In this document: positions 1-64,000 of the stretch, one piece after another | Position numbering within the stretch: position 1 is the stretch's first letter | How the letters are laid out: each line of letters begins with the position of its first letter | DNA from: Bispira polyomma | Lineage: Eukaryota | Reading direction: 5' to 3' | Length of the DNA stretch: 64,000 nt | Assembly (NCBI GenBank): GCA_965649765.1 | Contig: OZ287752.1 | Location: forward strand, 54,498,001 to 54,562,000 | Made by a program: the position numbers and the translations under genes | Notes under the pieces: generated by a model | Told to the model about the DNA's origin: nothing | Databases searched by the model: none | Seen by the model: the letters and a program-made list of their open reading frames with translations, nothing else

Positions 1-3000
1 GTTACAATTGTTACTTTCAGAGTTTGGTGTTAAATCCTGGGAGGGATTTGTACATATAGCAAAATTATTTTCATTTCTTTTTTTATTAAAACAAAAATCA
101 TCTCTTTCTACACGATTTGATATGTTAAGATATTAATGTAATCTTTTAATGCAATACAGGTTATATGGCTTATTTAACGATAACAGAACATCCATGACGA
201 GGTGACCAAACATGGTTAAATAACAGAAGTCTGCTGGTGTATCCTACAAATATGAAACATTACTTGGCTATTCCTGATCTCACGAGAGGTCATTTCTGGG
301 GAGGGGGGGGGGACAATTTCGAAGTTAATTAATTTATTTTAAATAATGCTTTTATATATTACTGTTCAAACATATTTAACTTAAAAAATAAGTCTGATAT
401 GGGAAGAATTTTAAGCAGTACATGTGAGTTTATTTTTGCCTGCAAAATGAGACATTTGTGAGGTGGGTCAATTAACTTCAGATCACCTGCCCTATCTTTA
501 AAGCCGCCATGCATATGTAGTAATGAAAAAGGTGCTTTCTGTTCATTCTGTTTTTTTAAATAAATGCACATGTAAAAATGAATCACACAATAAATTGAAA
601 TTGCAAGGCACAGCAATCAACAACAAAAAGTAAATATTAAGTCAACCACAGACATAGGAAGTTTATTTGGCACCTGCTAGTCTCTGATTTGCTTTTTATT
701 TCTGGTTACCAGTCACGTGATTAGTAAATAGAATAGTATTTGTGAAGGTCAAACATACGAAGAAAAAAAAGGTCTAGCAGAAATGAAAGAGAAAAGTATC
801 TATTTAACCCAAATATTGATAATATTTATTTGTGCTTAAGAACATATTTATTTTCTGAATTTCTCTCCCAGGTCACCATTCATATTTCTCTTTCTATAAA
901 ACGTAAACCTGAGTAGACTTTGATTTATTTGTCCTACAAAGTTCTGTATACAAGTCCAGATTACTCCATCAAGTGTTTGACAACCACATACACACAACCA
1001 CTGTAGGTCCCTAGCACTTCCTTGCACTCATTTGTCTTCACAAACTGGTGAGATCTGACCATGGACAACATTCCTCAGTCGTCGAGTGGATTATTTACGC
1101 AACTTTTATCTGAGCTCTCTAACTTCTGAGCACTTTACCAGTTACTAGCTACTAAAAAACTACTATATATCGAATCTACAGTTTTATTTTATATCAATCA
1201 ATCTCTTTCTGGTACAATTCTGTAACAGAGTAGTATGCAAAAACAGCTTTACAATTTCTATATTTCTATCTTAACATCACACATTTGGTAATATTAGTTT
1301 TCAATTTTTATAAACACGTATTTCATGTTTTACATTTATGAGCATTTGACGATAATGATATTTTAGAACATACATTCAAAAGGTAAAAGTGTATTTTACA
1401 TGCACAAGCAAAATTCAAACAAAAATATAATATTTAATGGCCAAAAATGTTGATCAAAAGTGTTTTCGTGGTACTATTAAGTTCTAAATCTATTTTAAAC
1501 ATCACTAATATTTGCCACAAAAAAACATAGATTTGAAAGAACACTGAAGATAAACATGTACTTTAACAAACATAAATATTTCATGTGTATTAATTAAATA
1601 TTAGTCAAATATATATATTTTTTAAAATTTTGAAGCTAAGTAAAGGAAAAGAGAGTCCAGATTTGATAAAATTGCCCTACTTTTTGACTGATGAACTTGC
1701 TTATCAGTTATTACTCATTCAATATCACCTAACATTTCACAACACACACAAGACCCCCCTTTCAGTACACAACCGTGAGAGCCACTTAGTAATTCCACCC
1801 ACCAAGTGAACTGACATTTAATTACCATATAACTTCATAATATTTGGTAGAGAAGCTGAGGTTTTGAATGACAGCTGTAATGAAAGCATTGAGCTAGGCT
1901 TTCACCATTATACAAAAGCTTGAGAAACCTATTTGTCCCAGGTTTATATAGGTTTACATCAACATCATGCTTCTTGTTCATCAACTTTCAGCAAAATATG
2001 CAATCTTTTGGCATTTCCTGTTACATTGCCAAAAAACACCTTCTCTTTCAAAAATATGGAAGTTACAAAGTCAAAATACAAACATACGCAAAGCTTTACC
2101 CAAACATACATTGCTGCATATCAAACGTATAGTGGTTTTTAGCAAATGATGAATGATTAAATTTTGCACAAAATGTGTATGACCAAAGCTTCCGATATTT
2201 GTTAGGGTGTTCTCTACTTGAAAATAGAGTGGCGTTATCCGGTTCCCAAACCTCACCTACTTAGATTACATCCTTATTGTACAGTTATACTTATACATAT
2301 ATAGTTGTGTCTAAAATGCCATTAATTCTAAGATCCTTTTTAAGATTATTGGAAAATAGTAGACACATATTTCAATCGGAAAGTGCCAGGTTTAATTTAA
2401 TTATTGTAAGACTACTTGGGGTTTATACAAATTCATTACGGAACATAACACCATAGCAATATTTTATATGTTTACATATATCATAGACATACGCACAAAT
2501 ATACCATATAATATAGACAATGTGTCGAAAAACATGGATGGTTACTACTGATTGTTCAACATGTTTGGTGCTTTTAAAAAAAACTGTATGTTTTAAAACG
2601 TTATCACCATGTGAGTCATAAATCTTCAATATAACCTTACTATTAGTCTTGCTGAACAACAAAAGATTGTTTCAAACATTATAGCTTTGTTTTACTATAT
2701 TTCAGAGTTATAATTCATACCACAAGACTCAGTTACTGCTATGGTAGTCATGATGATAATACTGACATACAAGTTAAGAGAAGTAAGTCAACTATAACAC
2801 CTTAGGTAAATGTAAACTATATCTACTAAAACACTTGTCGTCCAGCACAGAATGAATGACAACAATAACTATTTATAATATGTCTGTGAAGTTCACTGGT
2901 ATCTGTACATTATCTGAGATCTTGACATATAAAAACCATTCTTATTTCTGTAGACAAGTTTCATTTTTCACATTAGACCAAATGTGCCGCTACATGTATT

Positions 3001-3069
3001 ATTTACAATTATGCTTGTTGCCTACTTCTAGTTAAATCTGTATAGAATCATTGCAGTCCACGTGCACCG

Positions 3070-3268
3070 CCCTCCAAAATGGACGCTATTCGCCCCCCCC
3101 TCCCCCCAAATGACCTACTTATAAAACAGCCCATTGGTTGAAAATATCCCCTGCCTCCCGTTCTTTTAGATGAATGATTTCATAGTCCTGTCCCTCCAGC
3201 ATGGCCGCCATTTGTTTATTTCCCCTACTTATATAACAGCCCATAGGTTGAAAATATCGTCTGCCTCC
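3070..3268. repeat. Diverged direct duplication with a 45-bp conserved core (present in all units)
   Basis: cctacttata.aacagcccat.ggttgaaaatatc..ctgcctcc at 3114-3158 and 3224-3268 (41/45 identical), each preceded by a ccctcca..atgg.cgc.att block. Confidence 0.85.
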
Positions 3269-4061
3269 TTTTTTCCAGGCCGGCAGCTTTCTCAGTCTCT
3301 TCCTGTTCCCTATGGACCACTATCTCCACACTTTCTCTGGGTGACAGGTACCTGAGATTGACCACATCTACTGGACAGTTCAGACTGTCTAGCCTGGCAT
3401 GTAAACTAGCCTTTCTGGTCTCGGGATTGGGTTGTTTCAAATCCATTCTGCACTTTTTGTTGTACATATTACTATCACCTTTAAGAAGAGATAAAACAGC
3501 TTTTTCTGTTAACAATATTGTTATAAATTCACAACCACACTGAACAAATATTTTTATACTATACACTTGCAACAGTATTTTGCACAAGTTAAATTTTCTT
3601 GTAGTTTAATTATATTTTTACGAACAATCCCTGAAACGTTTGTTCTCTAGCATTAAACAAATGTTGTTTTTTTTTATCACAATTGTTTGTTTAAATAGCT
3701 ATCTATCTAACTTCTATTTAGTTTATTCTTAAATAAGCTACCAACACCACACGATGTTCGAACATAGACACTCTGATTTACTCAGAGCATTGTGCATTGA
3801 TGGAGCATAATATATATGAAACTGATGGCATTGATGGACACAAGAGTAAGTAATGAGAGTTGAGTAAGACATTCAGCCTTCTTCACAAAACAAAAGCATG
3901 ACTGGATGTGTTCATCAAATTACTGATTTATCTGGACCACATTTCTGCTTCCTTTCAAAGACCTCTGGGTATAAATTGACCTTAGCATAATTTTTACTTT
4001 TCCTGGTTGAGCATTGCAAACTTGGACAGATTCCCTATAATGAATATGGGAGTACTATTTA

Positions 4062-4065
<4 letters not shown>

Positions 4066-4115
<50 letters not shown>
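4066..4115. repeat. (AT)25 microsatellite
   Basis: Directly visible. Confidence 0.98.
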
Positions 4116-4117
<2 letters not shown>

Positions 4118-4484
4118 GGTATTCTTCTCGCTGGGGTCATCCGGGTGGTTAGATAGGCTAGGCTAATATTCTCAAAAAAAATTGTGAGGCAGAGGAAATT
4201 CACATTCGATACAAAAGCCAAGGTGACACTTACGTCTAGCAATAAGTAATTCAGTAAAGTGGTATGTTCGCTTAACCATGATCAACATTACAACCTTACT
4301 GAAAAATAATGGGCGTTATAATCCTCTTGGTGAGCATTCTGAATATCTATTTTTTTTTTTCAAAATGACTGTCAAGTTGTAGAAATTGGTTTAGTGTTGG
4401 TATTAATAGAAACATCATTTCATTAAAAAAAGGGATTATAATTCACACAAATTAAGGCAATTTTTGATACTAAATAAATAATAA

Positions 4485-4795
4485 TTGTAATGATAGTTGT
4501 CACCTGATATAGTTATGAACAACACTGTTATTTAATGTGCTATGACATTATTACCCCACCCTGGGTTCTTCTACTTGTCAAATAATAGTTCACTCTCAGC
4601 TCCCTTAGGGAGAATACTGGCCATGCCGCCACACATACAGAGCACAAACACCACTTTAGTGGCCAGGTACCCATTTATACACGTGGGTAGAGAGGGACAA
4701 CTTCGTGCATATTCCAAGGATAACCAGGCCAGCAGCGAGCATCGAATCTCGACCTTCACATCCAAAGTACACTCTAACCAATAGGCCACAGAGTG
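4485..4795 (-). mobile_element. tRNA-derived SINE with CORE-like central domain
   Basis: Minus strand: A-box-like tggcctattggttag, B-box-like gagattcgatgc, central tccttgg...ccctctctacccacgtgtataaatgggtacc resembling invertebrate CORE-SINEs, and an (ATT)n-like tail. Confidence 0.75.
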
Positions 4796-4799
4796 GTTA

Positions 4800-5360
4800 T
4801 AATAATAATAACAATAAATATATTATATAGCGTTCAACTGGTACATAAGAAAAATAAATAAAAAAATTCTGTGTTCTCTGGCGCTTGTCTTCTGAAATAA
4901 ATGAGCTTTTAGCTGTTTGCTGAATAGGTTGTGGCTGTCTGTTTTTCTGAGGTAGTCTGGATGAGAGTTCTGTGAGTTTGACCCAAATACAGTAAAACTA
5001 CAGTCAGCAAGTGTCGGAACATCCAATAGATAGTAGTGTTTTTTTTCATCTAACAGGATAGTCGCAGTTTTTTTTTATTGAATTCGATTCTGTTAATATC
5101 TCGGTGCTTTCTGGTGAATACATTTATGGACTGTTGTCAAAATTGAAACAAAATTCTGTAGCGAATTGGAAGCTAGTGGAGTGTCTTTAGTGCTCTTGAA
5201 CTACTAGTGTTATTTGTCTTATTTTAGCACATGCTTTGCTGCTGCATTTGGCAATTTTTGCATCATTTTAGTCTATTTCTCAGGCAAGGCCATAAAGATA
5301 TCATTGCAGTAGTCCAGATGGAATAGAACAAGGCCATACACTACTTGTTTGCATTCTTTT
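4800..5360 (-). mobile_element. Decayed L2/CR1-clade LINE, 3' end of ORF2 plus tail
   Basis: Minus-strand pieces KQVVYGLVLFHLDYCNDIFMALPEK*TKMMQKLPNAAAKHVL, ALKTLH*LPIRYRILF, TVHKCIHQKAPRY and ADCSFTVFG..NSHPDYLRKTDSHNLFSKQLKAHLF match L2 C-terminal motifs (LDYCN, QNAAAR, LHWLP, WNSLP, FKxxLKTxLF). Contains stops and frameshifts; ends in gctatata...attattatta. Confidence 0.9.
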
Positions 5361-8300
5361 GCATTTGCATTTAAACAATTTAAGTTGTTAATACAAAAAA
5401 ATGTGTCAGAGGCACTAACAGTGGCATACTTACAATATAAACTATTTTGTGAATATCAATTAATGCTGCACACACTAATAGTGATATTCCATTAATTCCC
5501 ATTGAACGAAAATATCCGGCAAAACATCACCCCCATCTTGTATATAAGGATTATCAATTGGGCCAAGAAGAACCATCCATCATTAGATTAGAGTCTTTAT
5601 CAACGAAAAGCAGGATTTTTTGTCTCCTTTTTTGTTTTGTTTTATTACACCCCACAGCAGCTGCAAAACGTTATACACCCCACGATGACTCTCTGAAGAG
5701 ACAAGGAGAATCAACAAAAAAATGATTTTATTGTTTCTAAGCAGCATTGAATCCTACCAATACACACAGGTGTTTCCCTTCCACCAATTTATCACACTTC
5801 CCCATAGACATCTAGCCTTCACTAAGGCTCAGAATGTGCCAGAAGGCCACATATAGAGATAGCTATTTTGTATAAGAGACCTAATGGCTTTAACATTCGC
5901 TTATGGGTGGTCTCCTATGGTCTACTGGTTAGGAATTTGGTCTGATGAGCAAAAGGTCCCCAGTTTGACACCTAGTTGGCGGAGTTGGTCTGTTGAACAG
6001 GATATACTGCCAAAGTTGCAATGTCCATTTGGGATAACATTCGCTTGCAAGATATGAACACGTCATTGTTTACTGATGATGTTGACCAAGGCTATGCTGT
6101 AGGATTATGCATTCTGTAGAATCAGCATCATAGAGGGTGATATCTCAATAGGATGTGATATAAATGTTCAATAATACTAAACTAAACATGAACCCAGGGA
6201 ACCATTTAAAATGATGATCCTCTGTCACTTGGGTCTCATTCCCAGTGGCAGGCTTATAAGGACCTTGTGGACATTGATTAATGGTGTCATCTTCAAGTTG
6301 CAGTCTTCAGGTAGGTTCACAACTTTGCAAGAACTAGAATTTAAACGCATCAATTGCAACATTAATTGGCAAAACTCTTTAATTTTGCCAGATATATTAC
6401 TTTGGGGGTAAATAGACTTTGACTGAATGGCATTTGAAATAGGTCGTTCTAGTTTGTAAATACAACACACTGTGTATATGTAATTCTGCAGTACAGTCAC
6501 AGCCAACAACCAAAAGATGAGGCCATTGCATTATTAGAATAGGGAGCATGGTTGTGACCAAACGAAGATAATGGAACAGTCTGTCTCCCAGTACATAAAT
6601 ACACCTAAACCAATTAATAATTTAAATTGACCTACCCACTAAAAATGATGGTACAATAATAGCATACATTGTGTACAGCATTATGGAGTGGATGGCATTT
6701 TGGGTTTTCAACATCTTAAATGAATGCCAAGCAGCTTCATTGTAATGATGTTAATGGTTCTTGGGGCGCTGCTGACAACCTGTGATGCCTGATAAAAATT
6801 ATTGGTATTTGTATTCACAGTTACAGTCCGTGCAGTATCGGTCATTATCTGCCAACCTGACGATTTAGATGAGGTAATAAAAATTTGGCCCAAAGGTCAA
6901 ACAGGTTTTTTGGTGTAGAAGCAGTTTTGACCTGTCTGTTATTAATGTTTTAATTCTGTTTGGTTTAGTACTAACATAGATTGATGTATATTCTTTTTCT
7001 TACTGTCATTAAATTGGTACGCTTGGGTGTACTGGCATTACTGCTTGCTACACCCCTGTAATAAAAGAGATCTCAGTTTTATCAGCCGAACAATATCGAT
7101 TTTAAGAGCTGATAATGTCATTATCAGCTGTGAATGATAAATATGCACAACTAAGGAGCCTGTATTGACATGATAATCTGTTAGTAGCGCCCTGCTTACT
7201 GGTATCATAGTATTTATTATACACCTACTAATATTGTATATACCATAATGAGTGATAATATTGAAAACCTCAATTTATATATATTAACACAAAATTGTCA
7301 AAAAGACATTGTCAAAGTATCTTGTACAAGTGTGGGAAAAGCGTAAGGAAATTTGATCTAAACAGTTGTTTCAAGGTTGATTTAGAATTGGTTACATACA
7401 TGTATAACAAAGGATTTATGAGTATATAATATGACCAGTAAAAAATGTATATGTGTTTAAAGTGACATATAAGCCCAAAAATTGTATTTTTTTTTAATTA
7501 CATGTCACTATAATAAAAATATATATCTATCTGCATCACTTAATGCAAATCTAATGCACCTACCAATGCCCTAAGGCCCCAAAAAAATGAAAATAAAATT
7601 CTTGGATCTGCCTGGATCACCCAACGAAGTGTCATGTTTGCTGTAAACAAACGGTAAAAACAAATCCTTATTGGCTGATGTACTAAAGATATAACACATT
7701 CTGTCACCTGGCTTTTAAAAACAACTTAAAATGACCGACTACACGACACAACAAATATGTATATATAGCCTGCTCCCGACACGACATTACACAGCAATTA
7801 AACTTGGAGAAATCTCTTCAAAACTGCTGTGTTGTTGTTTATATCGTACAGTATCCATATGATGTTTATATATACAGCTGTTGTTAATATGTATTTTATA
7901 TGGATTATGTAGTGGTGTTTCATGTAAACAGTACTGTTGTGCCTTGACGTGTCGTCCCCTGTAGTGTAGTACAGTGCCTTGGTTTCTAAACCCCTGTTTC
8001 TGCATAGTTGAAAGCGATGTAAAAAACCAAAATTCTGACTGAGATCTTTTGCTTATCCCTGTGTTTTAGCCCAACGATAGTTACCATAAGCAATATATTG
8101 CGCATACAAATACTGTTCTTGAAAATTCAATAATCAAATACAGCAGATCTAAAGGCTCATAACTCAGTCAAGGCACCAACGGGACAAGAACATTTGTTGT
8201 TTTATGTAATCCTAAGGTAAAGATCGAAAGAACAGAGACAAAACATCACCTCTTTGTCAGTTTAATATCCAATGTTTTTTAGTCTCTAACAGACTCTAAG

Positions 8301-8739
8301 AACTGGTATAACTTATGGTTTTTATGTAACAGACAATTTCACCTTCTGAACATCAAAGTGCCCTGAGCAAAGTTGCTGTGACTAACCTATCTGTGAACAT
8401 TTAAAGGAATCGTGATCAGTAGAAACAGAGAGGAAGTTCTATCATTTATTGAATTACATTAGGCTTTTTTTTTTTTTTGGTGAATGCCAAAATTACAAGT
8501 TGTACTGCCTAAAACGCCTTTGAATCTTTACCTTTTCATCTTTTTTGTGAGAACTGTAAATAATTAGCTTGAACAATAAACCTAAAATAATAAAGTATTA
8601 GGTAGCCTTACGTGCACTGTTTCAACAACAGCACCTCTTATATATTAACTAAGAATATGAAGACCATGAAAGAAAACATATTAGGAAATACTAATATTTA
8701 TACTAAGTTAAAAGCTACACCTATATACACACTGAACAG

Positions 8740-9013
8740 TAGGGCCACCTTTAACAATTTAAGTTCAGTCACTTAAGGTGACTTTAAATTACCTTAGGTT
8801 ACTAACTTTGTGGTGACCTTAAACCGAGGTCACCTTAGCACAAGTTAAGGTTTGATTCACTTTGTGTTGAATGTATAAAAGTATGTGGTCATCTGTGGTG
8901 ACCTTATACTAAATTAAAGTATTGTTAACTTACCAACTTTTTAGATAAAGTTAACTTTAAATACATGAAGTTAAGTCTAAATATAGATTTACTGCTCTAT
9001 TGAGGTGGCCCTA
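8740..9013. mobile_element. MITE-like non-autonomous DNA element
   Basis: Perfect 11-bp inverted termini tagggccacct (8740-8750) / aggtggcccta (9003-9013), the outer TA possibly a target duplication. Internal palindromes gtcacttaaggtgac and ggtgacct..aggtcacc. Confidence 0.7.
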
Positions 9014-9381
9014 AATATATAACTTTGAGAAATTGTAAAAATATAGATATATGTAAAGAAAAGAAAGAGCCCCCTTATGACCAGATGTGTTAGCTAATGG
9101 CTAAAACTTAACTCAAACTAGCAATAATTCTTCAGTCCATGCTACAGCATCACTTAGCTCACTAGAACCTTACATGACTGCGACAGCCCGTTGTTACATC
9201 AATCATCATGGCCAAACTATATTATGCAAACATATATTTTTCTCTTGACTGGCTGTAGTAATCCATGTTTGCCTTGCGTGCTTTTGGCTGCTTTGAGTAT
9301 TATTGGATCACTTGTTGGAGCCAGGGTGTGTGAAACTACAAACTACCTGTGAAATATAGTTTACAATGTTTAAACAAAACG

Positions 9382-9556
9382 CCAAATTAAAACGCAATAT
9401 GCAAAATTGTTACACTTTGATTCAAACTAAACCACTCTTTGTCAAATTACACCATCCCCCAAATTGCAACCTATTGTACCAAATTACTTCATATCCTTGT
9501 ACCATATTATGACACCACTTACCAAATTAAAATACAATGTGCCAAACTAAAACACA
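9382..9556 (+). repeat. Degenerate 20-bp-period array of a CCAAATT-like motif (all units)
   Basis: Motif at 9382, 9402, 9422, 9442, 9459, 9479, 9502, 9522 and 9542. Confidence 0.75.
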
Positions 9557-10822
9557 TTTAAAATTTGAACGATGATGATAGCTCATGTATCCGTTATGTA
9601 GACAGGTGCAGGTCGACACCATGGAGACGCTGGGAAGCTGACCCATGGAATGGTGGAAAAGCCTTGCTAAACAGACAGGTATTGGACATCTGTATGAAAC
9701 AGGGCAGAGAGGCAGAGTGATTCCACACGTTAAGAAGCATCATAAGCAAAAGTATGCTTGAAATGTGTTATTTATTTATGAACTGATGGATTAAAAATTT
9801 AAAAATTGGACCTAATTTGCCTGGTATTGTGTAAACGTGTATGAGGAGAAAGGTGTGGGCCAAAAATGCTGCAGTTAGAAACTTGTAAATTAAATGACTG
9901 TTTTAAAGATTGAACATTATCTGCCAAATTAAAACACTTGTTTACACTGGAACATGGACACACACACTGTTCTATTCTATAATTTTTTTCTGTGAAGGTC
10001 ATACACCTGCCATATATTGCCTGATATTCCTGGTGCACTATCATAGTCCAGAGCCAAGGCAATATTTTAAGAAAAAATACTGTAGTACTTCAGGCAAGTA
10101 TGGTTAAATAAATGTTTGGTGAAATAAAAACTTCTTTTACTTTACAAAAACGTAAGATATGTGAACTAATTTCAAGAGGAACTGAATTCCAAAGCAGCCA
10201 TGTTACGTGACAAAATGAATTCCACACCTGTTCTAGTCAAACTTGGAGATATTTGACACATACTAAATGATGATACATATTAGAGTATAATGAGAGGGAT
10301 ATGTCATAGGTTCTTAAGAGCTCTTCATAATCAAATGTATTTGCTTTTTCCAATAATACTCCCCCCCCCCTCCTGCATTTACTAAGGCGTCTAAGTCACT
10401 GTTTTTTCCTGAACCAAAGTGAAAGTAAATCCCAAAGACAAACAGTAAGCAAGAAAAGCAAAGAATTAGAGTGACACCAAAGAAGGCTTGTAAACTGAAA
10501 CTCTCCTCACAAAGAGAAGTTTACTGTAAGACCTTGTATTATTGTCACCCTGAGAAACTGTAACTCTGCACAGTGTAATTGTACTTCTCTTTGGGTAAAT
10601 GGAAAATAATACTGTAAAATTAAAGACTGAGCATGTCTACCTTATGGTAAAGTAAAGAGTGGGCTTCCGATGATATAATAGATGATCATCGAAAGGAAAG
10701 CCATTCTTCAATTATCAATAGTGTACAGGGCCTTTATTTTTATTTTAATGATTTCTGTTTGAGCAATTTTTTCTTAAATTTCACATTCATGGGGTTCATG
10801 GTTCATGGGCTTCATGGTTCAT

Positions 10823-11027
10823 GGTGGTGGACTAGTGGTTAAATGTGTTAACTTTACAATCACTGGTCTCTCACTAAATTGGGTTCGAATCCTGCTTGTT
10901 TCTTTGGGTGGGGAAGTTTGGCAGGTACTTGCAAACAGGTCATTGCTTGCTTCAGGTACGATTTCTTCCACCATTAAATCTGGCAGTCATGATATAACCT
11001 AAGCGACGTAAAATCAAACTAAATTTA
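10823..11027 (+). mobile_element. tRNA-derived SINE, older diverged member (MetaSINE-like body)
   Basis: A box tggactagtgg, B box ggttcgaatcc. Shares acaatcactggtctctcac and the atataaccta..gacgt.aaa 3' end with the SINEs at 11277 and 18168. Confidence 0.75.
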
Positions 11028-11276
11028 AATACACACACTTGCCAGTAATTTAACACACTGCACACTTTCTTTTTGTAATTTTAAGGAAACACTAAACTTA
11101 ATTTTACGATTACCATATATTAATAGTCTTAATGCAGGGGCATGTGTAGAAGCTTGTGTAGAAGCCAGTACGCAAAAGCATACCAATTTTATGACAGAAT
11201 GAGCCCCCCCACCCCCACCCCACCCCCAACGAATTTATGTTAGTACAAAAAAAAACAAACATAATAGTTTGATACA

Positions 11277-11520
11277 TTAGCAAGCATTGCGCTTCACAAT
11301 CACTGGTCTCTCACCTCTGGGCGACGTGAGTTCGAATCCCGTCAATACCTATGTGGGAAAGGTGGTAGTTCTTTACTGTTGGCCGCTAGTTTCAGTGCAG
11401 AACCTTGATCAACTGTATGCAGTGTTTCCTCCAGCGTTTCCAACTACCCGTCCCAATATAACCTAAACAGGTACTAGAGTGGACGTTAAATATCCAAATT
11501 AAAAAAAAAAATAAATAAAT
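11277..11520 (+). mobile_element. 5'-truncated tRNA-derived SINE
   Basis: Highly similar over ~220 bp to 18188-18420. B box gagttcgaatccc present, A box lost, A-rich tail. Confidence 0.88.
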
Positions 11521-11639
11521 ATAGAAGTAAAACATTAACATTAAATTGGGGTATACCAAATGAAAAATCCTAACTACTCCCCTGTAATGTTATGGAAACT
11601 TTAACATATGAATTGCAAAAAAATGGGTTTGTCCAATTT

Positions 11640-20331: not shown

Positions 20332-20362
20332 CTTCACTTGTGCTACTATGATAATTAAGCAA

Positions 20363-49931: not shown

Positions 49932-49935
<4 letters not shown>

Positions 49936-49967
<32 letters not shown>
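49936..49967. repeat. (AT)16 microsatellite
   Basis: Directly visible; same locus in unit 3. Confidence 0.98.
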
Positions 49968-49969
<2 letters not shown>

Positions 49970-50647: not shown

Positions 50648-50651
50648 GTTA

Positions 50652-54200: not shown

Positions 54201-54591
54201 AACATCAAAGTGCCCTGAGCAAAGTTGCTGTGACTAACCTATCTGTGAACATTTAAAGGAATCGTGATCAGTAGAAACAGAGAGGAAGTTCTATCATTTA
54301 TTGAATTACATTAGGCTTTTTTTTTTTTTTGGTGAATGCCAAAATTACAAGTTGTACTGCCTAAAACGCCTTTGAATCTTTACCTTTTCATCTTTTTTGT
54401 GAGAACTGTAAATAATTAGCTTGAACAATAAACCTGAAATAATAAAGTATTAGGTAGCCTTACGTGCACTGTTTCAACAACAGCACCTCTTATATATTAA
54501 CTAAGAATATGAAGACCATGAAAGAAAACATATTAGGAAATACTAATATTTATACTAAGTTAAAAGCTACACCTATATACACACTGAACAG

Positions 54592-54865
54592 TAGGGCCAC
54601 CTTTAACAATTTAAGTTCAGTCACTTAAGGTGACTTTAAATTACCTTAGGTTACTAACTTTGTGGTGACCTTAAACCGAGGTCACCTTAGCACAAATTAA
54701 GGTTTGATTCACTTTGTGTTGAATGTATAAAAGTATGTGGTCATCTGTGGTGACCTTATACTAAATTAAAGTATTGTTAACTTACCAACTTTTTAGATAA
54801 AGTTAACTTTAAATACATGAAGTTAAGTCTAAATATAGATTTACTGCTCTATTGAGGTGGCCCTA
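54592..54865. mobile_element. MITE-like element (unit 3 copy)
   Basis: Copy of 8740-9013. Confidence 0.7.
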
Positions 54866-56676
54866 AATATATAACTTTGAGAAATTGTAAAAATATAGAT
54901 ATATGTAAAGAAAAGAAAGAGCCCCCTTATGATCAGATGTGTTAGCTAATGGCTAAAACTTAACTCAAACTAGCAATAATTCTTCAGTCCATGCTACAGC
55001 ATCACTTAGCTCACTAGAACCTTACATGACTGCGACAGCCCGTTGTTACATCAATCATCATGGCCAAACTATATTATGCAAACATATATTTTTCTCTTGA
55101 CTGGCTGTAGTAATCCATGTTTGCCTTGCGTGCTTTTGGCTGCTTTGAGTATTATTGGATCACTTGTTGGAGCCAGGGTGTGTGAAACTACAAACTACCT
55201 GTGAAATATAGTTTACAATGTTTAAACAAAACGCCAAATTAGAACGCAATATGCAAAATTGTTACACTTTGATTCAAACTAAACCACTCTTTATCAAATT
55301 ACACCATCCCCCAAATTGCAACCTATTGTACCAAATTACTTCATATCCTTGTACCATATTATGACACCACTTACCAAATTAAAATACAATGTGCCAAACT
55401 AAAACACATTTAAAATTTGAACGATGATGATAGCTCATGTATCCGTTATGTAGACAGGTGCAGGTCGACACCATGGAGACGCTGGGAAGCTGACCCATGG
55501 AATGGTGGAAAAGCCTTGCTAAACAGACAGGTATTGGACTTTTGTATGAAACAGGGCAGAGAGGCAGAGTGATTCCACACGTTAAGAAGCATCATAAGCA
55601 AAAGTATGCTTGAAATGTGTTATTTATTTATGAACTGATGGATTAAAAATTTAAAAATTAGACCTAATTTGCCTGGTATTGTGTAAACGTGTATGAGGAG
55701 AAAGGTATGGGCCAAAAATGCTGCAGTTAGAAACTTGTAAATTAAATGACTGTTTTAAAGATTGAACATTATCTGCCAAATTAAAACACTTGTTTACACT
55801 GGAACATGGACACACACACTGTTCTATTCTATAATTTTTTTCTGTGAAGGTCATACACCTGCCATATATTGCCTGATATTCCTGGTGCACTATCATAGTC
55901 CAGAGCCAAGGCAATATTTTAAGAAAAAATACTGTAGTACTTCAGGCAAGTATGGTTAAATAAATGTTTGGTGAAATAAAAACTTCTTTTACTTTACAAA
56001 AACGTAAGATATGTGAACTAATTTCAAGAGGAACTGAATTCCAAAGCAGCCATGTTACGTGACAAAATGAATTCCACACCTGTTCTAGTCAAACTTGGAG
56101 ATATTTGACACATACTAAATGATGATACATATTAGAGTATAATGAGAGGGATATGTCATAGGTTCTTAAGAGCTCTTCATAATCAAATGTATTTGCTTTT
56201 TCCAATAATACCCCCCCCCCCCCCTCCTGCATTTACTAAGGCGTCTAAGTCACTGTTTTTTCCTGAACCAAAATGAAAGTAAATCCCAAAGACAAACAGT
56301 AAGCAAGAAAAGCAAAGAATTAGAGTGACACCAAAGAAGGCTTGTAAACTGAAACCCTCCTCACAAAGAGAAGTTTACTGTAAGACCTTGTATTATTGTC
56401 ACCCTGAGAAACTGTAACTCTGCACAGTGTAATTGTACTTCTCTTTGGGTAAATGGAAAATAATACTGTAAAATTAAAGACTGAGCATGTCTACCTTATG
56501 GTAAAGTAAAGAGTGGGCTTCCGATGATATAATAGATGATCATCGAAAGGAAAGCCATTCTTCAATTATCAATAGTGTACAGGGCCTTTATTTTTATTTT
56601 AATGATTTCTGTTTGAGCAATTTTTTCTTAAATTTCACATTCATGGGGTTCATGGTTCATGGGCTTCATGGTTCAT

Positions 56677-56881
56677 GGTGGTGGACTAGTGGTTAAATGT
56701 GTTAACTTTACAATCACTGGTCTCTCACTAAATTGGGTTCGAATCCTGCTTGTTTCTTTGGGTGGGGAAGTTTGGCAGGTACTTGCAAACAGGTCATTGC
56801 TTGCTTCAGGTACGATTTCTTCCACCATTAAATCTGGCAGTCATGATATAACCTAAGCGACGTAAAATCAAACTAAATTTA
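56677..56881 (+). mobile_element. Diverged SINE (unit 3 copy)
   Basis: Copy of 10823-11027. Confidence 0.75.
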
Positions 56882-57130
56882 AATACACACACTTGCCAGT
56901 AATTTAACACACTGCACACTTTCTTTTTGTAATTTTAAGGAAACACTAAACTTAATTTTACGATTACCATATATTAATAGTCTTAATGCAGGGGCATGTG
57001 TAGAAGCTTGTGTAGAAGCCAGTACGCAAAAGCATACCAATTTTATGACAGAATGAGCCCCCCCACCCCCACCCCACCCCCAACGAATTTATGTTAGCAC
57101 AAAAAAAAACAAACATAATAGTTTGATACA

Positions 57131-57374
57131 TTAGCAAGCATTGCGCTTCACAATCACTGGTCTCTCACCTCTGGGCGACGTGAGTTCGAATCCCGTCAAT
57201 ACCTATGTGGGAAAGGTGGTAGTTCTTTACTGTTGGCCGCTAGTTTCAGTGCAGAACCTTGATCAACTGTATGCAGTGTTTCCTCCAGCGTTTCCAACTA
57301 CCCGTCCCAATATAACCTAAACAGGTACTAGAGTGGACGTTAAATATCCAAATTAAAAAAAAAAATAAATAAAT
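57131..57374 (+). mobile_element. 5'-truncated SINE (unit 3 copy)
   Basis: Copy of 11277-11520. Confidence 0.88.
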
Positions 57375-57493
57375 ATAGAAGTAAAACATTAACATTAAAT
57401 TGGGGTATACCAAATGAAAAATCCTAACTACTCCCCTGTAATGTTATGGAAACTTTAACATATGAATTGCAAAAAAATGGGTTTGTCCAATTT

Positions 57494-57953
57494 TTACCTA
57501 ATATTAGGTCGATTAAGCACCTTTGGTTCACATTAGCGATACTCTTTCTTCAATAGATGTAAAATCATCAATTTAATTGAACTGAAACAAGCTTTACAGG
57601 AAATGTGGAAAACTTTACCCAATACTTTGGAGGCGAATGTTCAAAGCCTGCCTCGAAGGATGGCAGCTAATGTACAGACCAAGGGGACAGACCAGAGGCT
57701 TTGATAAAAAATACTGAAAAAATTAGCTTTTTTAAAAATATCATTGATTTGGTTTGTAACTTAAATTTAACAGTTGTGAAGTTTGTTTTAAATGTAGTTT
57801 ACTGTAACTGTGACAACTGTAATGCAAAGAAAACTTTTAAATGAAAATCATACCTACATACATATATATTAACAGATAATGTCTCAAATTTATTAAAGAC
57901 TTATATATATAAAATTTGTTCAAATCTAATCTACCATTTTTAGCAATGCTGTA
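57494..57953 (+). mobile_element. Tc1 remnant (unit 3 copy)
   Basis: Copy of 11640-12099. Confidence 0.8.
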
Positions 57954-60900
57954 TATAATTCTAAACTAATTTAAAGGAAAATTCAATTTTTTTATCTCAC
58001 ATTTTCAGCTATTTACTGTACTAAAATCAGGAAGTACATATATCCTGCCCTATCTCTTTTAAGACCCCTCTCTTCCATCTTTCTGGGGGGTATTGAAATG
58101 GAAAGATTTGCAGTACCCAAACCCAGTGGCATTAATAGGTCTAAAGCCCCAACTCAAATTGAGATAGAGTGTCCTGTGACGGTTTGATCCCCTCACTTGT
58201 AAAGTTCAAATAGCTGAAACTTGTGACTTGCAACTGCAACTATCTTACTGTGGGTGATTTCAGCTTTGCCTACCTGAGCATTTCTGGTGTAGTTGTTGTA
58301 TTTGTCGTTCTTGATATTTGGTATTACATTAGAAAATATATAAGGAAAATAGCACTCAGTAGAGTGCAAACCTCAACCAGGGTGGTCCAAAATCCTAAAT
58401 AGGGATGTGATTTACTTAGTTATAGACCTAAACCCGCCTGAACTCAGCCATCTCAATAGTATAATGCAAAGTAGATCAATAACTTATTTGAACAAATCAC
58501 CCATTTCTTAGTAGTTCTTAGTAAGATTAGGTAAACCCTCATATATATTGAATACTCTGTTCAAGATTTGATGACTTCTGTCTTACCCCACTATAGGATT
58601 TAACCAAAATTAGTTGAGCAGTATTTGTGTAATGCTGCAGAAATTTTGGTCTTACTGAACTTCAGTTATCCTACAGGGTTATTTCTCACTTATTGGCCCG
58701 GTGGTGCCTTGGTGGAGTGAACCACTAACAAAATTTGTCCTAGACTTTCACAAATGTTTTGCATAAAATCTGTGATTACCTCAGTGAGATTGTGGTGGTC
58801 CAGCCAAACGCAGAAAAATAAAGTATGGATCAGTACAAAAAATGATGAGAATATGGAAAAATTGTAATCTGGCACCATTCACCTTATTTTTTGTGTGTAC
58901 AGATTTGGTAAGGTGTTTGTGTATTCCCTAACGGTGGCCCTGAAATTTAGTAAGATGCTACTACTGATAAAACGAATAAATGGTGAATCACAGCAACTTG
59001 TAAGGACAGACTAAGGTATATCTCCATGGTTTCCTAAAGCATATATTTTATTAGGATACCAGCATTTGTTTTCTTGCACATTCACCACTCGGGTTGTGAC
59101 CTAATTGCTTGCAAGTATTATCCTATATGGTGAAGTTTAAGTTACTTCTTTGACCTTGCAGTGTGTGAAAGGTCACGTTATATGAGTAGGGTAAGTTATG
59201 AAGCTGCTGCTTCTATATGCAACTTTCTATATGTGTCATTTGAAGGTTTAAGTAAAAGTGACCAGCAATCTGTATCTGTTAGGTGATTGGTTAATGTAGA
59301 GTAATCAATTGGTTGGCAAGCAATTTTACCTTAAAGCTCTATATTTTAGTTACTGAGGTGCCATTCCACTATTATTACAACCTTAGCAATCAGTAAAAAA
59401 TTTGCTTTCAATCCCAAGTCCAACTATCATGGTTTTAAAACCAGGTTGATTGTGGTTTTAAAACCATAAATTGCCTTGACCGGGCCTCCAAGCCATGGAT
59501 ACAACCCTTGTGAAACCATGGAGCCCCCTAATGATCACAGGCAGATGGCTTCCACGCTGGAAATGTTGGGCATGCTCAAAACTGCTTTGGATCTTTCACG
59601 GTGAATCGTATCAATGATTAACCACAGTGATACACACTGATTAGCCCTAATCGCAGTCACAAACCTCATCAACCCAAATTAACCATGATTGGTCTGGGTA
59701 AAGTCTGTGTTGCTGTTGTCTCAAATGTACAAGCATTTGTCTTACTTTATGACACCCCCGTGACACCCTGATTTACCAAGGTAAGCCTGGTAAACCCTGA
59801 CTGGCAAAACCATAGATCAACCCCTCATTTGACCCTCTATATCCATTCCCACGCCATCAGAGTTAGTGTACTTTTTAAACGATCTCTCGCGAAAATGATA
59901 CGCTGTGTATGGTGTGAATGATGGCATTATTGCCAATATGGAAAGTGACTGCATTGCTCCCTAATGTAAAGTTGTTGAGGGTTTTTAATCTTTGAATTTT
60001 AAGTACTAATCTCAAGTAGCAGTAGTTTAGTATATATTTAGTATTTCTGTCTATCTGAACAACAATTCCTTTGCAAAATCCCAAAATTTAGTATTTAGTA
60101 TATATTTAGTATATCTGTCTATCTGAACCACAATTCCTTTGCAAAATCCCAAAATTAATTTATGTCTTCCCTGAGCAATATGTATGAAACTTATGTAAAA
60201 ACTGTGCTAGGATTTAGCTAAATCTTGATATTTTACCATTTATCCTTCCCGAGAAGAAGACAAGAACAATTCCGTTTTTGTGATTACCAAATCAGTTAAT
60301 ATCTTAACTAAGCAAAAATATCAACCTTTAGACAAACCTAAGCCAGGATTTGGTTAGAACCATACATCTGGCATTATGTCCTGCCAAGGAATGACATTTA
60401 GTAAATCACCAAACCCAACCATTAAACATATGACTGACTTATGTGATATAGAGTAACACGTGACATGTTAGCAGACAGTGTAATGACTTGAGAGGTCTCT
60501 CTACTGACGTGCTAGTGTCATTGTCTTTATGGGATATATATGATATGTGTGGGAGTTATCAGATGGTTCTTAAACTCATACTCAAAACCCAAAGCTCACA
60601 TATATAGACTTTCTTATGTAATTGATATAACCTAACCATGTTACCATGAACCTTTGAGTGAGGAATTCAATTATGCAGTCCAGTTTTAGATGTCTTTATT
60701 ATACACAGAGATACTGCAGCACATGTAATGATACATTCTTTTCTTAAATTTAGCACATTTATAAGGACCTTCCCCTGGGGAGATAGGTATGGGATGTTAG
60801 TTTATTAGTGTAATGGGGATGGAGACAAAATTGGCCTTGTAAGAAGTTATGTAGACAGGCATGATAGACAGTTTGGGATAGCACGAGATATACTGGGCCA

Positions 60901-63900
60901 GCATCAGTTTTACTGGCAAAGCATTTCAGCATTTTCAAACAGTCAGTTCAGCAAGTGAAATTAATTGCTAATGCAAAAATATGTCACTTAAAGTTCTAAA
61001 ATTTGCAATAATATATTTATCAGATATCATACAAGAAAAATGGTTCAGTGTTTGTCCTACATTTCTTTTGCATACTTCAGGACAAAATAAGCCAGGTATG
61101 TAAATACATGTACATGTAACCTAAGACATTGGATGACTTGACTTTATCACTAAGTCATGTGGTCATCCTGGCCTAGTTGCTAGGGAGTTGGTTGGGTTGT
61201 GGATAAGACCCAGGGACTTAAACTGTTAATTTCTGTGGTCATCTAAGCCACTATGTGTCTGCCTGTTCCTGCTAGCCCTAGATTGGGATCGTACCCATGT
61301 CCTTGGTACTTGTAAGTGAGTGTGTTGCCCGATTAGTATTGTATTATATATATTGACATCAGTTTGGAACTCAAACAGTTGTACTTTTTAAGTAGCTTTA
61401 AACATTCAGGTACAATGAACTTTTTAACAAGGTCGCAAGGTAAAATGCTATTGTTTAATTAATATGGTTAAGTTATCAAGCCTGCAACTTTTAGCAAGGC
61501 TAACTGTGCTTATGGTGTGTAGTAAGAGATTTAACTGGTGACCCTTATTGTTGGCTATTATTGTCATGGTCAATAATCTGAAGAAATGTAACCAGAATTT
61601 ACTCAGAAACAGATACTTCTGAAACTATAGCCATCGGTCATAGATACATAAAGATAAATGAATCAGATTCTAACCATGTCTGCGAGATTACTTGTTATCT
61701 TGGACTAGTTGATTTATTTGTCTAGAACATTACCTTACAATAACAGTAATTAAGGTACCAATATCTATCGTAACATAATAATTGACACCAAAATAGATTA
61801 AATTAGATATTTATATCTTGCATTGAACAATAATGTTTTAATTGCAGATTTAAAACTTGACAGTTTTTTTAATTTGTCTGATGTTAATTGGTAAGCTGTT
61901 CCAAAGCTTAGGCAGCACTGCATGAAAAAATATTTATCGTTAGATGTTTTGTGGCTGCTAGCAGCAAAATTAAACAAAATTACAAATCCCATTTACATGA
62001 ATGTAATTGAGGAATGGTAACATTTTTAAATGTGATTGATAGATTTATCTAACACATTTTTACAATATGTTTGGATACAATATATGTTAAATGATAATGA
62101 GAAACAATTGATAGATTGCATTGCTTGTCATACAACATCACGTACATACGAATGTAGGCTGAGGTAAAATTCTCCAAATAGCTCTGCGAATCCATCCGAA
62201 GTATTCAATAATGAGTCTACCTGTTAAAAGCACTGACACACTGTTCTAGTGTATGCCACTGTCAAGGTCATACATCTATCACATATTGTGGAATATAACG
62301 CACTAATGATCCTCTAACTGTTGAACTGTCTTAGTCCAAAGTCACAGAAACCACTAAGGTCATGGCCACCAGGAAGATACAGAATAGAGTCAGGATGTAA
62401 CTGGTAAAAACCAGTTTACATCAAACTCAGAGTTCAAAACTGAGAGAAGTGAACCCTCCTGGTGGCTATTCTATTGTCTCAGTCACTTATTGTGTACTTA
62501 TGCGCCATTATTGATATCAGCTATATCTTCAAATGGACAGCATAAAGCTCAGGGTATATAAGGTAACACGTAAAGCTATATATGTTACAGCGAATTACAT
62601 TCAGTCAGTGATTTCGCAAAATCCCTGATACATAATGTACTTTTTACACTTATTGAATGGATTTTAGGGAATTTGTGAAAGACACTAATTTTACTTTCTA
62701 GTTAGGAAAATACATTAGAATCCAAAGTGAGCGAATTAATAATAAAGTCATAAATTATTGTGGGGTAATATGTTTTTAATCATTTTGTGAGTTCAGGAGC
62801 ATCTGGTTCTGTAGAATACATATGAAACTTTCTGGGAAAAGACATACTTTAAAATAAAGACTAAATATAAAATTCAACCAGAATATTTGAACATACAGTG
62901 AGCATTTGCATGTATTCATTAAAAACTTAAAACTCTACATGTGTACATACATTTTAAATAATCCATCATAATGTAAGAAACCTCTGAGGAGGTTGAGCTA
63001 GATGTCTTCTAGTGAATTACCGACAGAAAAGGATGTTGAATGTGGACTTCTTTATATTATATCCTAAAAATATGTTGTTTATGGGTGCATTATTACTCAG
63101 GGGACAGTTTTATATCAATTTTCCACAATTTTAAGTTACTTTACCATTGGAGCATATGACTACATAAGCATTGCTGGTCATCATAAGACTAATTGTATTA
63201 TCACATCTTGGCCAAGGCTATTCATCCCCAATGGTGGCATTACCAGGCACACTAGTGCCACTCAAACGCCAGCCAAGCTTCTAGGCCACTCTGCCACACT
63301 TCATGTAGTTTTGTGATAGACATGGTTATACTTTTTGTATTTTGCTTTTGTACTGTGAATTTATATGTACACATTGTGAAGAATTTGATGAAAAAGAAAA
63401 AAACAAATAAATTCTATTTCAGCCTCTAAAATATATCTAACTATGTATAAACAGAACTATGGCAAGTACGCGATGGAGTTATGAATAGCTATTTCCATTC
63501 ACAGAATTAGGCAAAATAAGAAAAAATATTGAGTTTTTTAGTTTTTTGTCTGCGAGTCAATATAGGTTTACTGGTACAGTTCACAAACTAAATTGGCCAG
63601 ACAATATATTCCATTATGCACTGGGAGTTGTAAAAGTGTTTAACAATAAACTTCTGGTATGGGATTATTATCTTATTCATTGAATTTTTAGCATGGGTAT
63701 TGTAGTAACTTATATAGGTTGTAGAGAATCAAATATTATATCTTCGGGAAGACAAATAACTACATTTCTAATAGTTTCATAAAATCAACATATATCATAT
63801 ATTAGCTAAGAACATTTTACACACTAAAAACTGATAGAGATATAATACCAAATTTTCAAATAATTAAGCATTTTAAAGTGTCTGATTAAATGGTGCAGAC

Positions 63901-64000
63901 ATATGCGAATTGCACGGTTATATTATCATTTAATAAATGTACTGCTGTCTAAAAATCTTTCACTTACTTTAATCAGTTGCTGTTTGTTTTTTGTTACAGT

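What the first reader, a model, noticed from the sequence alone, without database searches (positions are those of the whole stretch)
1..64000. ~23-kb tandem amplicon whose only evident cargo is one small orphan gene
Seen: at least 2.8 head-to-tail, near-identical units with no array boundary in the window. The only intact gene-like element per unit is a 600-bp intronless ORF; the rest is old repeat debris. No rDNA, histone, snRNA or autonomous transposon gene explains the amplification. Inference: a recent gene-dosage amplification (ampliconic, macrosatellite-like locus) driven by this gene. A third gene copy is predicted just outside the window at ~65.7-66.3 kb.
Basis: partly seen in the sequence, partly recalled or inferred. 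Interest (0 to 1): 0.8.

Follow-up and report, generated by a model that had tools for sequence, protein, structure and literature searches.

The report
Young 23-kb tandem array, two genes
A 23-kb stretch of an invertebrate-like animal genome is repeated head to tail at least 2.8 times, and each unit carries two small unannotated protein genes rather than one orphan, which makes it a young but ordinary gene-bearing tandem duplication.

Summary
The repeat is real. The window holds 2.8 head-to-tail units of 22.8-23.3 kb and no array end. Units differ by about 0.2% in substitutions (ts:tv 33:18) and by three unit-specific indels of 163-482 bp.

The 600-bp ORF is a real intronless gene, but not a strict orphan. 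It has 8 diverged, dispersed relatives (E down to 1.5e-21) in one other eukaryotic genome. They share four cysteines, two hydrophobic segments and a promoter with TGACGTCA (CRE) boxes.

The claim that this ORF is the only cargo is wrong. Each unit also carries a 73-codon gene (3225-3446, minus strand). It is 73% identical to a single-copy ORF in that other genome, and 17 of 23 core differences fall at third codon positions. Conserved blocks flank it in the same order upstream and downstream. Unit 3 has lost the upstream block.

No rDNA, histone, snRNA, tRNA, transposon or Pfam domain was found. Nothing shows that gene dosage drove the amplification: the two visible copies of gene 1 differ by four amino-acid changes and no silent change.

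Verdict: a new member of a known kind, the gene-bearing macrosatellite or young tandem segmental duplication. Both protein families are undescribed. Copy number, expression and organism remain untested. The sequence is not human-like.

The parts
1..22831 (.). Tandem unit 1 (register arbitrary; the window starts inside the array)
   Evidence: Self-megablast offsets 22831/23305; MAFFT of the three units
22832..46109 (.). Tandem unit 2 (23,278 bp). It carries a unit-specific 482-bp segment at 30367-30848.
46110..64000 (.). Tandem unit 3, partial (17.9 kb). It lacks 239 bp present in units 1 and 2 (junction near 49851) and has a private 163-bp segment at 62936-63089.
19732..20331 (-). Gene 1, copy 1: intronless CDS of 199 codons plus stop. 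It encodes a small membrane protein with an N-terminal hydrophobic segment (aa 8-26), a domain of about 100 aa with 4 conserved Cys (C36, C57, C99, C118), a second hydrophobic segment (aa 133-151) and a 44-aa tail.
43026..43625 (-). Gene 1, copy 2: intact. It differs from copy 1 by 4 nucleotides, all nonsynonymous (T46A, I77M, E125K, V198M, numbered from the ATG), all at non-conserved family positions.
20332..20462 (-). Gene 1 promoter, copy 1. It holds the only full TGACGTCA of the unit (20455-20462, -131 from the ATG), four further TGACG/CGTCA half-sites (20396-20441), and the block 20359-20401 that aligns with the paralogues' promoters.
43626..43756 (-). Gene 1 promoter, copy 2. It has two differences from copy 1 (43712 and 43701). 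The first removes a CGTCA half-site.
19398..19455 (-). Three AATAAA signals 276-333 nt after the gene 1 stop (copy 2: 42692-42749)
3225..3446 (-). Gene 2, copy 1: CDS of 73 codons plus stop. It is 73% identical to P0009 of the other genome, with ATG and stop at the same positions.
26061..26282 (-). Gene 2, copy 2 (identical)
49334..49555 (-). Gene 2, copy 3 (identical CDS, but its conserved upstream block is deleted)
3792..3949 (-). Conserved block A, 346-503 nt upstream of the gene 2 ATG. It is 80% identical to L006:9367-9528 and holds an AGATAA (GATA-like) site and an aligned TATA-like element, so it is the likely promoter. Copy 2 is at 26628-26785. It is absent from unit 3.
1784..1848 (-). 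Conserved block C, downstream of gene 2 (75% to L006:11409-11473), probably 3' UTR. Copies at 24615-24679 and 47893-47957.
907..1040 (-). Conserved block D with an AATAAA, in the same order as L006:~11860-11960. It is a candidate 3' end of the gene 2 transcript. Copies at 23738-23871 and 47016-47149. The similarity is weak.

Best explanation
This is a real, very young tandem segmental duplication of at least three units of about 23 kb, in the nuclear genome of a CpG-methylated, AT-rich, non-mammalian animal. An initial duplication was most likely expanded, and partly homogenised, by unequal crossing-over or gene conversion between units (inferred).

Each unit carries two complete small genes on the minus strand. 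Gene 1 is an intronless 199-aa membrane protein with a four-cysteine domain. It belongs to an undescribed, fast-evolving, lineage-restricted family whose members keep a promoter built around TGACGTCA (CRE/ATF-type) boxes. Gene 2 is a 73-aa protein under clear purifying selection, with a conserved upstream block that looks like a promoter and conserved blocks downstream.

The amplification multiplies the dose of both genes. The copies already show the first steps of birth-and-death evolution: only amino-acid changes between the gene 1 copies, a lost CRE half-site in one copy, and loss of the gene 2 upstream block in unit 3. I therefore take the array to be a nearly neutral or only weakly selected copy-number variant, not an amplification driven by the 600-bp ORF.

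Shown: the array, the two genes, their conservation, the promoter motifs and the differences between units. Inferred: the recombination mechanism, transcription, membrane topology and the absence of dosage selection.
For: Array. The differences look like real mutations: ts:tv is 33:18, 57 substitutions fall in 17.8 kb, and there are private indels of 482, 239 and 163 bp with no other copy in the window or the fetched loci. Exchange between units: private substitutions are unevenly spread along the unit. Units 1 and 3 are nearly identical over the first 8 kb and share the lack of the 482-bp segment, while unit 3 is the outlier over 8-18 kb (chi-square p = 5e-4).

Nuclear animal DNA: CpG o/e is 0.36 and GC is 0.345. 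tRNA-derived SINE copies are shared with Mb-sized contigs of ENA assembly ERZ22147071.

Gene 1 is real. Its open frame is far beyond chance. An exhaustive phmmer search gave 7 relatives, E 1.5e-21 to 1.3e-6, and an eighth came from the profile word search. All six whose loci were fetched are contiguous ORFs on different contigs. G, C, Y, C, F and S are invariant, and both hydrophobic segments are conserved. 8 of the 15 TGACGTCA sites in 123 kb lie within 200 bp upstream of the six ATGs, and the promoter block aligns. CpG o/e is highest in the unit at 19-21 kb.

Gene 2 is real. The match to P0009 has E 4.7e-24 and 53/73 identities. In core codons 18-67 there are 15 synonymous against 5 nonsynonymous codon changes, with differences by codon position of 5/1/17. 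ATG and stop are at the same positions. Blocks A-D are in the same order in both genomes.

Unit 3 lacks block A. No other cargo was found.
Against: Copy number and the array ends are not visible in the window, and no reads were available, so an inflated or deflated copy number in the assembly cannot be excluded. There is no expression data for either gene. Four differences in gene 1 are too few to tell neutrality from diversifying selection: P(all four nonsynonymous) is roughly 0.3 under neutrality by my own estimate. The excess of differences in the CDS is significant only against the whole-unit rate (p = 0.04), not against the local rate (p = 0.17). Block A is called a promoter from its position, its conservation and a TATA-like element only. 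Other small conserved genes or RNAs may sit in the remaining ~19 kb. The one extra word search I could afford found gene 2 at once.
Confidence: 0.7

Rival explanations
1. One reading: the array is an adaptive gene-dosage amplification selected for higher output of the 600-bp gene (gene 1).
For: Gene 1 is intact in both visible units and keeps its promoter motifs. None of the four amino-acid differences hits a conserved family position. The family is lineage-restricted and fast-evolving, as is typical of amplified reproductive or immune surface proteins (the comparison is from general knowledge).
Against: A second gene shares every unit, so gene 1 is not the only candidate. There are 4 nonsynonymous and 0 synonymous differences, and one CRE half-site is lost in copy 2. 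In the other genome the 8 relatives are dispersed single copies. There are no population or expression data.
Confidence: 0.2
2. Assembly artefact: a single-copy or two-copy locus, or two haplotypes, wrongly laid out as three tandem units.
For: Copy number cannot be checked without reads. The units are very similar.
Against: All three units have private substitutions (12, 19 and 26) with a biological transition bias, and private indels of 163-482 bp. Two haplotypes cannot give three distinct units. The window has no N and no gap. No mitochondrial or viral genes point to a concatenated circle.
Confidence: 0.07
3. The selected or causal element is something other than gene 1: gene 2, whose dosage may matter, or an unrecognised small gene, non-coding RNA or regulatory element elsewhere in the unit.
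For: Gene 2 is much better conserved than gene 1 (73% against 40% identity to the same other genome). Its three CDS copies are identical. About 19 kb of the unit is unexplained, and my search for small genes was limited by the caps.
Against: Unit 3 has lost the conserved upstream block of gene 2, which argues against strong selection for gene 2 dosage. Identity of 222 bp is expected anyway at 0.2% divergence. No Rfam or Pfam signal lies elsewhere in the unit. No further conserved blocks appear against about 30 kb of the orthologous region.
Confidence: 0.12
4. The window lies inside a long, silenced heterochromatic macrosatellite of tens to hundreds of units, in which both genes are passengers.
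For: There is no array end within 64 kb. The DNA is AT-rich and CpG-depleted.
Against: Both genes are intact with conserved promoter motifs, and local CpG o/e rises to 0.58-0.74 over gene 1, as expected for a region that escapes methylation decay. At 0.2% divergence the array is too young for decay to be informative.
Confidence: 0.1

Closest known systems
Human gene-bearing large tandem arrays: TSPY (20.3-kb units, >99%), CT45 (19.9 kb x 4), RBMY (23.6 kb x 2.3), as tabulated in PMC2588610
   Same: Head-to-tail units of about 20-24 kb, more than 99% identity between units, one or a few complete genes per unit among interspersed-repeat-bearing DNA, and presumed growth by unequal crossing-over.
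   Different: Different organism (not mammalian by composition), and the genes are unrelated. Here there are two tiny single-exon CDSs rather than a multi-exon testis gene. Chromosome, copy number, polymorphism and expression are unknown.
D4Z4 macrosatellite with the intronless DUX4 ORF (3.3-kb units; PMC2588610, PMC12376486)
   Same: One intronless ORF in every unit of a macrosatellite.
   Different: The unit here is seven times larger. The ORF encodes a small membrane protein, not a homeodomain factor. It has its own conserved promoter and paralogues that are not in arrays. A second gene is present.
'Megasatellites' made of ordinary interspersed-repeat-bearing DNA amplified by unequal crossing-over (PMC2588610)
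   Same: An ordinary genomic segment with SINE relics that was amplified later. The SINE copies sit at the same place in every unit.
   Different: Those arrays were defined as gene-free. This one carries two genes.
Young tandem gene duplicates undergoing birth-and-death evolution (general knowledge)
   Same: Near-identical copies with the first inactivating or diverging changes: a promoter-block deletion in one copy of gene 2, and amino-acid changes between the gene 1 copies.
   Different: Nothing essential. This is the category I file it under.

Membership tests
Gene-bearing macrosatellite / ampliconic tandem array | Head-to-tail repeats with a unit of several kb or more | tested here: met
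   Units of 22,831 and 23,278 bp, all in the same orientation
Gene-bearing macrosatellite / ampliconic tandem array | Very high identity between units (above about 95-99%) | tested here: met
   99.5-99.97% with gaps counted. About 99.8% for substitutions alone
Gene-bearing macrosatellite / ampliconic tandem array | A complete gene in each unit | tested here: met
   Gene 1 is intact in both units that show it. The gene 2 CDS is intact in all three units, but its upstream block is missing in unit 3
Gene-bearing macrosatellite / ampliconic tandem array | Many units, and copy number that varies between individuals | not testable with these tools
   Only 2.8 units are visible. No reads, no flanks, no other individuals.
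Gene-bearing macrosatellite / ampliconic tandem array | Germline- or testis-biased expression of the amplified gene (true of many ampliconic families) | not testable with these tools
   No expression data. The CRE boxes are only a hint.
Orphan gene (no detectable homologue outside the species) | No relatives in exhaustive protein searches | tested here: not met
   Gene 1: 7 relatives by phmmer over 1.84 billion representatives, best E 1.5e-21. Gene 2: P0009, E 4.7e-24. All come from one other genome (ENA ERZ22147071). Neither has a Pfam, PDB or PHROG match.
rDNA / histone / snRNA / tRNA gene arrays | The unit contains the RNA or histone gene | tested here: not met
   Rfam at gathering threshold and at E<=0.1: nothing. 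ARAGORN: nothing. No histone domain in the Pfam scans.
Transposon-borne or transposon-derived amplification | Transposase, RT or integrase domains, or flanks shared between copies of the gene | tested here: not met
   No such domain in 217 open frames. The flanks of the six family loci do not align in the same order.
Single-pass (type I) membrane protein with a disulfide-bonded ectodomain (gene 1) | N-terminal signal peptide, one later TM helix, conserved paired cysteines between them | tested here: inconclusive
   Kyte-Doolittle peaks at aa 8-26 and 133-151, and four conserved Cys in between, in most members. No signal-peptide predictor was available. AF2 models have low confidence (pLDDT 61 and 68) and no fold match.
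CRE (CREB/ATF)-regulated promoter (gene 1 family) | Conserved TGACGTCA close to the start site | tested here: met
   8 of 15 sites in 123 kb lie within 200 bp upstream of the ATGs, typically at about -59 and -120 to -132. In the window there is a full site at -131 and half-sites at -110, -100, -88 and -69. Binding and cAMP response are not testable here.

The most novel reading that the evidence does not exclude
The array is a selected, copy-number-variable cassette that co-amplifies two undescribed cAMP-linked genes. One is a CRE-driven, fast-evolving four-cysteine surface protein with a reproductive or immune recognition role. The other is a conserved 73-aa protein carrying a perfect PKA-type site (RRQTI). 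The copies would be diversifying under positive selection, which would explain four of four amino-acid changes.
Probability: 0.1. Interest if true: 0.6.

Novelty: new member of a known kind. Interest (0 to 1): 0.35.

Why it matters
As a structure it is ordinary: young tandem segmental duplications with genes inside are well known. The value lies in the by-products. There are two unannotated small-protein families, each now supported by conservation in a second genome. One has a conserved CRE-box promoter. The other shows a clear purifying-selection signature and conserved flanking blocks. The array also catches gene duplicates at the very first steps of divergence. It is a caution as well: calling an ORF the 'only cargo' from sequence reading alone missed a 73-codon gene.

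Tried and rejected
- **Human or mammalian origin:** rejected. There are no Alu or B1 heads. CpG o/e is 0.36 and TpA o/e is 0.90. The SINE and both genes are shared only with a non-human ENA assembly. I therefore did not treat the contig as human.
- **Mitochondrial or viral concatemer:** rejected.
- **Word search with gene 1:** no hit. Only the exhaustive search found relatives.
- **Profile word search:** added one protein.
- **Pfam, PHROGs, PDB sequence search, two AlphaFold models and two Foldseek runs for gene 1:** nothing usable.
- **Pfam and PDB for gene 2:** only noise.
- **The search for related loci:** Single proteins or the gene 2 alignment in metagenome and viral contigs gave no relatives.
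- **Neighbouring 182-aa ORF in L001 as a tandem paralogue:** rejected.
- **Gene 1 riding on a Harbinger element:** such elements lie near two paralogues, but the flanks do not align in the same order, so rejected.
- **Gene 1 orthologue next to gene 2 in the other genome:** none from about 20 kb upstream to 10 kb downstream of gene 2 there.
- **Identifying the organism:** failed. From memory only, the SINE 3' part resembles SINEs of molluscs and other marine invertebrates. This is a lead, not a test.
- **Unit-specific indels as transposon insertions:** no target-site duplication and no other copies.
- **Spliced models:** none was built or joined. Both CDSs are single exons.


Full report
**Observation.** The window has no N and is 34.5% G+C. 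Shared 20-mers pile up at offsets of 22.5-23.3 kb. Self-megablast tiles the whole window with blocks of 3.5-19 kb at 99.5-99.97% identity, all in the same orientation. In an arbitrary register, unit 1 is 1-22831, unit 2 is 22832-46109 and unit 3 is 46110-64000. Both window ends lie inside the array, so 'at least 2.8 units, no boundary' is correct.

In a 3-way alignment the units differ at 57 sites in 17.8 kb, with 12, 19 and 26 private to units 1, 2 and 3. The u1-u2 transition:transversion ratio is 33:18. There are three large unit-specific indels:
- 482 bp present only in unit 2 (30367-30848);
- 239 bp missing only in unit 3 (equivalent to 3740-3978);
- 163 bp present only in unit 3 (62936-63089).

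None of these segments has another copy in the window or the fetched loci. The transition bias and the private indels look like real mutations in three distinct copies. They do not look like one locus tiled three times, and two haplotypes cannot give three distinct units.

Private substitutions are unevenly spread along the unit (chi-square p = 5e-4). Units 1 and 3 are almost identical over the first 8 kb and share the lack of the 482-bp segment. Unit 3 is the outlier over 8-18 kb. I read this mosaic as exchange between units by unequal crossing-over or gene conversion. That reading is an inference.

**What kind of DNA.** CpG o/e is 0.36 and TpA o/e is 0.90. There are no Alu or B1 heads, and no tRNA or Rfam family even at E<=0.1. 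Two copies of a tRNA-derived SINE (11277-11504 and 18188-18417, 91% alike) have relatives at 71-75% identity in contigs of ENA assembly ERZ22147071. Those contigs are 0.4-3.7 Mb, 35-37% G+C and CpG o/e 0.33-0.38, so they are a eukaryotic host genome inside a metagenome assembly.

I do not take the window for human, and I treated it as a non-mammalian animal genome. The organism could not be named. A mollusc-like or other marine invertebrate source is my guess from memory of the SINE tail only.

The CDS is 19732-20331(-) and 43026-43625(-), 199 codons from the ATG. The tool's 201-codon ORF starts at an upstream GTG. Its 221-codon open frame is far beyond chance: 300 simulated units give a mean longest frame of 121, sd 17 and max 186.

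Pfam and the word-index search found nothing. Because the 'orphan' claim rests on absence, I ran the exhaustive search. It returned 7 relatives, with E from 1.5e-21 (40% identity) to 1.3e-6, and a profile word search added an eighth. The five whose loci I fetched (P0001, P0002, P0004, P0006, P0007) are contiguous ORFs on five different contigs of the same ENA assembly. P0003, P0005 and P0008 were not looked up.

The alignment shows the following features:
- an N-terminal hydrophobic segment;
- a domain of about 100 residues with invariant G, C, Y, C, F and S, the motifs YGLSCG, EELYxCxLDWG and FSVxAYxC, and four conserved cysteines;
- a second hydrophobic segment followed by DYxIR;
- a variable tail.

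The most economical reading is a small single-pass surface protein with a disulfide-bonded ectodomain. This rests on hydropathy only. AlphaFold models were poor (pLDDT 61 for the full length and 68 for the ectodomain) and matched nothing in the PDB. The PDB sequence search and PHROGs were also blank.

The paralogues also share a promoter. Of 15 TGACGTCA sites in 123 kb of the six loci, 8 lie within 200 bp upstream of the ATGs, typically near -59 and -120 to -132. A block of the form ATGACGTCACAAA ... ACATAGAnACGTTACnGTTTC aligns across the loci. In the window, the only TGACGTCA of each unit sits at -131 (20455-20462 and 43749-43756), with half-sites at -110, -100, -88 and -69. AATAAA signals follow the stop by 276-333 nt. 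CpG o/e peaks over the gene at 0.58-0.74. The flanks of the paralogues do not align in the same order, so no mobile element carries the family.

Gene 1 is therefore a real gene of an undescribed, lineage-restricted family, not a strict orphan.

The second-longest frame (3228-3605, minus strand) is within chance by length: 34% of simulated units reach it. Since the finding claims a single cargo, I spent the last word search on it. It hit P0009, a 73-aa ORF on a 3.7-Mb contig of the same ENA assembly, with E 4.7e-24 and 53/73 identities.

The match starts exactly at an ATG (window 3446-3444) and ends at a stop at codon 74 in both genomes. In core codons 18-67 there are 15 synonymous against 5 nonsynonymous codon changes. 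The differences fall 5, 1 and 17 at codon positions 1, 2 and 3. This is coding sequence under purifying selection.

Around the CDS, three further blocks lie in the same order in both genomes:
- Block A (3792-3949; 80% identical) holds an AGATAA site and an aligned TATA-like element 346-503 nt upstream of the ATG.
- Block C (1784-1848; 75% identical) lies downstream.
- Block D (907-1040; weak similarity) lies further downstream and holds an AATAAA.

I read these as promoter, CDS and a long 3' UTR of a gene of about 3 kb. That gene model is an inference. The three CDS copies (3225-3446, 26061-26282 and 49334-49555) are identical. Block A lies inside the 239 bp that unit 3 has lost, so the third copy has probably lost its promoter.

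The protein has no Pfam or PDB relative and no relative in JGI metagenomes. It contains RRQTI, which fits the PKA consensus R-R-x-S/T-hydrophobic. This is general knowledge and was not tested.

In the other genome gene 2 is single-copy. No gene 1 relative and no other conserved block lies from about 20 kb upstream to 10 kb downstream of it. The adjacency of the two genes is therefore particular to the window's lineage, or was created by the amplification junction itself.

**The rest of the unit.** None of the 217 open frames of 40 aa or more in a unit has a Pfam domain, and there is no Rfam match. 'No rDNA, histone, snRNA or autonomous transposon' is thus confirmed. 'Old repeat debris' is not: I could recognise only the two SINE copies and one relic (about 4826-5455), and I had no repeat library. 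Further small genes cannot be excluded.

**Interpretation.** The array is a young tandem segmental duplication carrying two small genes. Nothing shows that gene 1 drove it.
- The two visible gene 1 copies differ at 4 sites, all nonsynonymous and all at non-conserved positions.
- Their promoters differ at 2 sites, one of which destroys a CRE half-site.
- The excess of differences in the CDS is significant against the unit-wide rate (p = 0.04) but not against the local rate (p = 0.17).
- One copy of gene 2 has lost its upstream block.

This is what the first steps of birth-and-death evolution of redundant copies look like. It is also compatible with diversifying selection on gene 1, but the data are too few to say.

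Large gene-bearing arrays with units of about 20-24 kb and more than 99% identity (TSPY, CT45, RBMY), and gene-free 'megasatellites' amplified by unequal crossing-over, are described in PMC2588610. I file the locus as a new member of that kind.

**Housekeeping.** No N stretches were present. No spliced model was needed or joined, because both CDSs are single exons and were searched by reference. 

Noticed in passing
window 11277-11504 and 18188-18417 (also 34585-34812, 41482-41711, 57131-57358); L001:4590-4797; L006:19570-19650; L007:17977-18095: A tRNA-derived SINE with a GGGTTCGAATCCCG-type head, a conserved body and an A-rich or (AAAT)n tail. The two copies in each unit are 91% alike, and copies in the other genome are 71-75% alike. 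The copies sit at the same place in every unit, so they were inserted before the amplification.
   Followed up: partly
window ~4826-5455 (-), also 27648-28277 and 50678-51307: Open frames here read ...LDYCN... and ...KAHLF.... From memory, this resembles a repeat relic widespread in aquatic animal genomes. It was not identified.
   Followed up: no
window 30367-30848; 3740-3978 with 26576-26814; 62936-63089: Three large unit-specific indels of 482, 239 and 163 bp. They have no target-site duplication and no other copy in the window or the fetched loci. The 239-bp loss in unit 3 has an ACC microhomology at its edges and removes the conserved upstream block of gene 2.
   Followed up: yes
window 3114-3158 vs 3224-3268: A 45-bp direct repeat (91%). 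The last codons and stop of gene 2 are duplicated about 110 bp downstream of the CDS.
   Followed up: no
window 4066-4115 (and unit 2/3 equivalents): An (AT)25 microsatellite whose length differs between units (14 and 18 bp shorter in units 2 and 3). There is also a 68-bp x 2 tandem at 14173-14308.
   Followed up: no
window 19877-20209 (+) and 19929-20165 (-): The gene 1 CDS is also open for 111 codons on the opposite strand and for 79 codons in a second frame. The gene 2 CDS has a 98-codon antisense frame (3247-3540). These are probably by-products of the stop-poor coding composition.
   Followed up: no
window gene 1 protein, residues 65-67 from the ATG (SRGDN): An RGD tripeptide lies in the variable loop of the putative ectodomain. 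It is absent from the relatives and is probably chance.
   Followed up: no
L002:500-3947 and L004:13122-16419: Harbinger-type elements (a DDE_Tnp_4 transposase plus a MADF protein) lie 2-6 kb from two gene 1 paralogues in the other genome. No shared flanks were found, so this is taken as coincidence.
   Followed up: partly
L007:12604-17301: A run of seven same-strand ORFs (94-328 aa), one with a faint phage-integrase hit, lies 12-17 kb upstream of the gene 2 orthologue. It may be a tyrosine-recombinase retroelement or Crypton-like element.
   Followed up: no
P0005, P0007, P0008 (L004 and others): A longer subfamily of gene 1 relatives (239-245 aa) shares a C-terminal tail motif (...AYTxRPxxRGIADALP...). 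The window protein lacks it.
   Followed up: no
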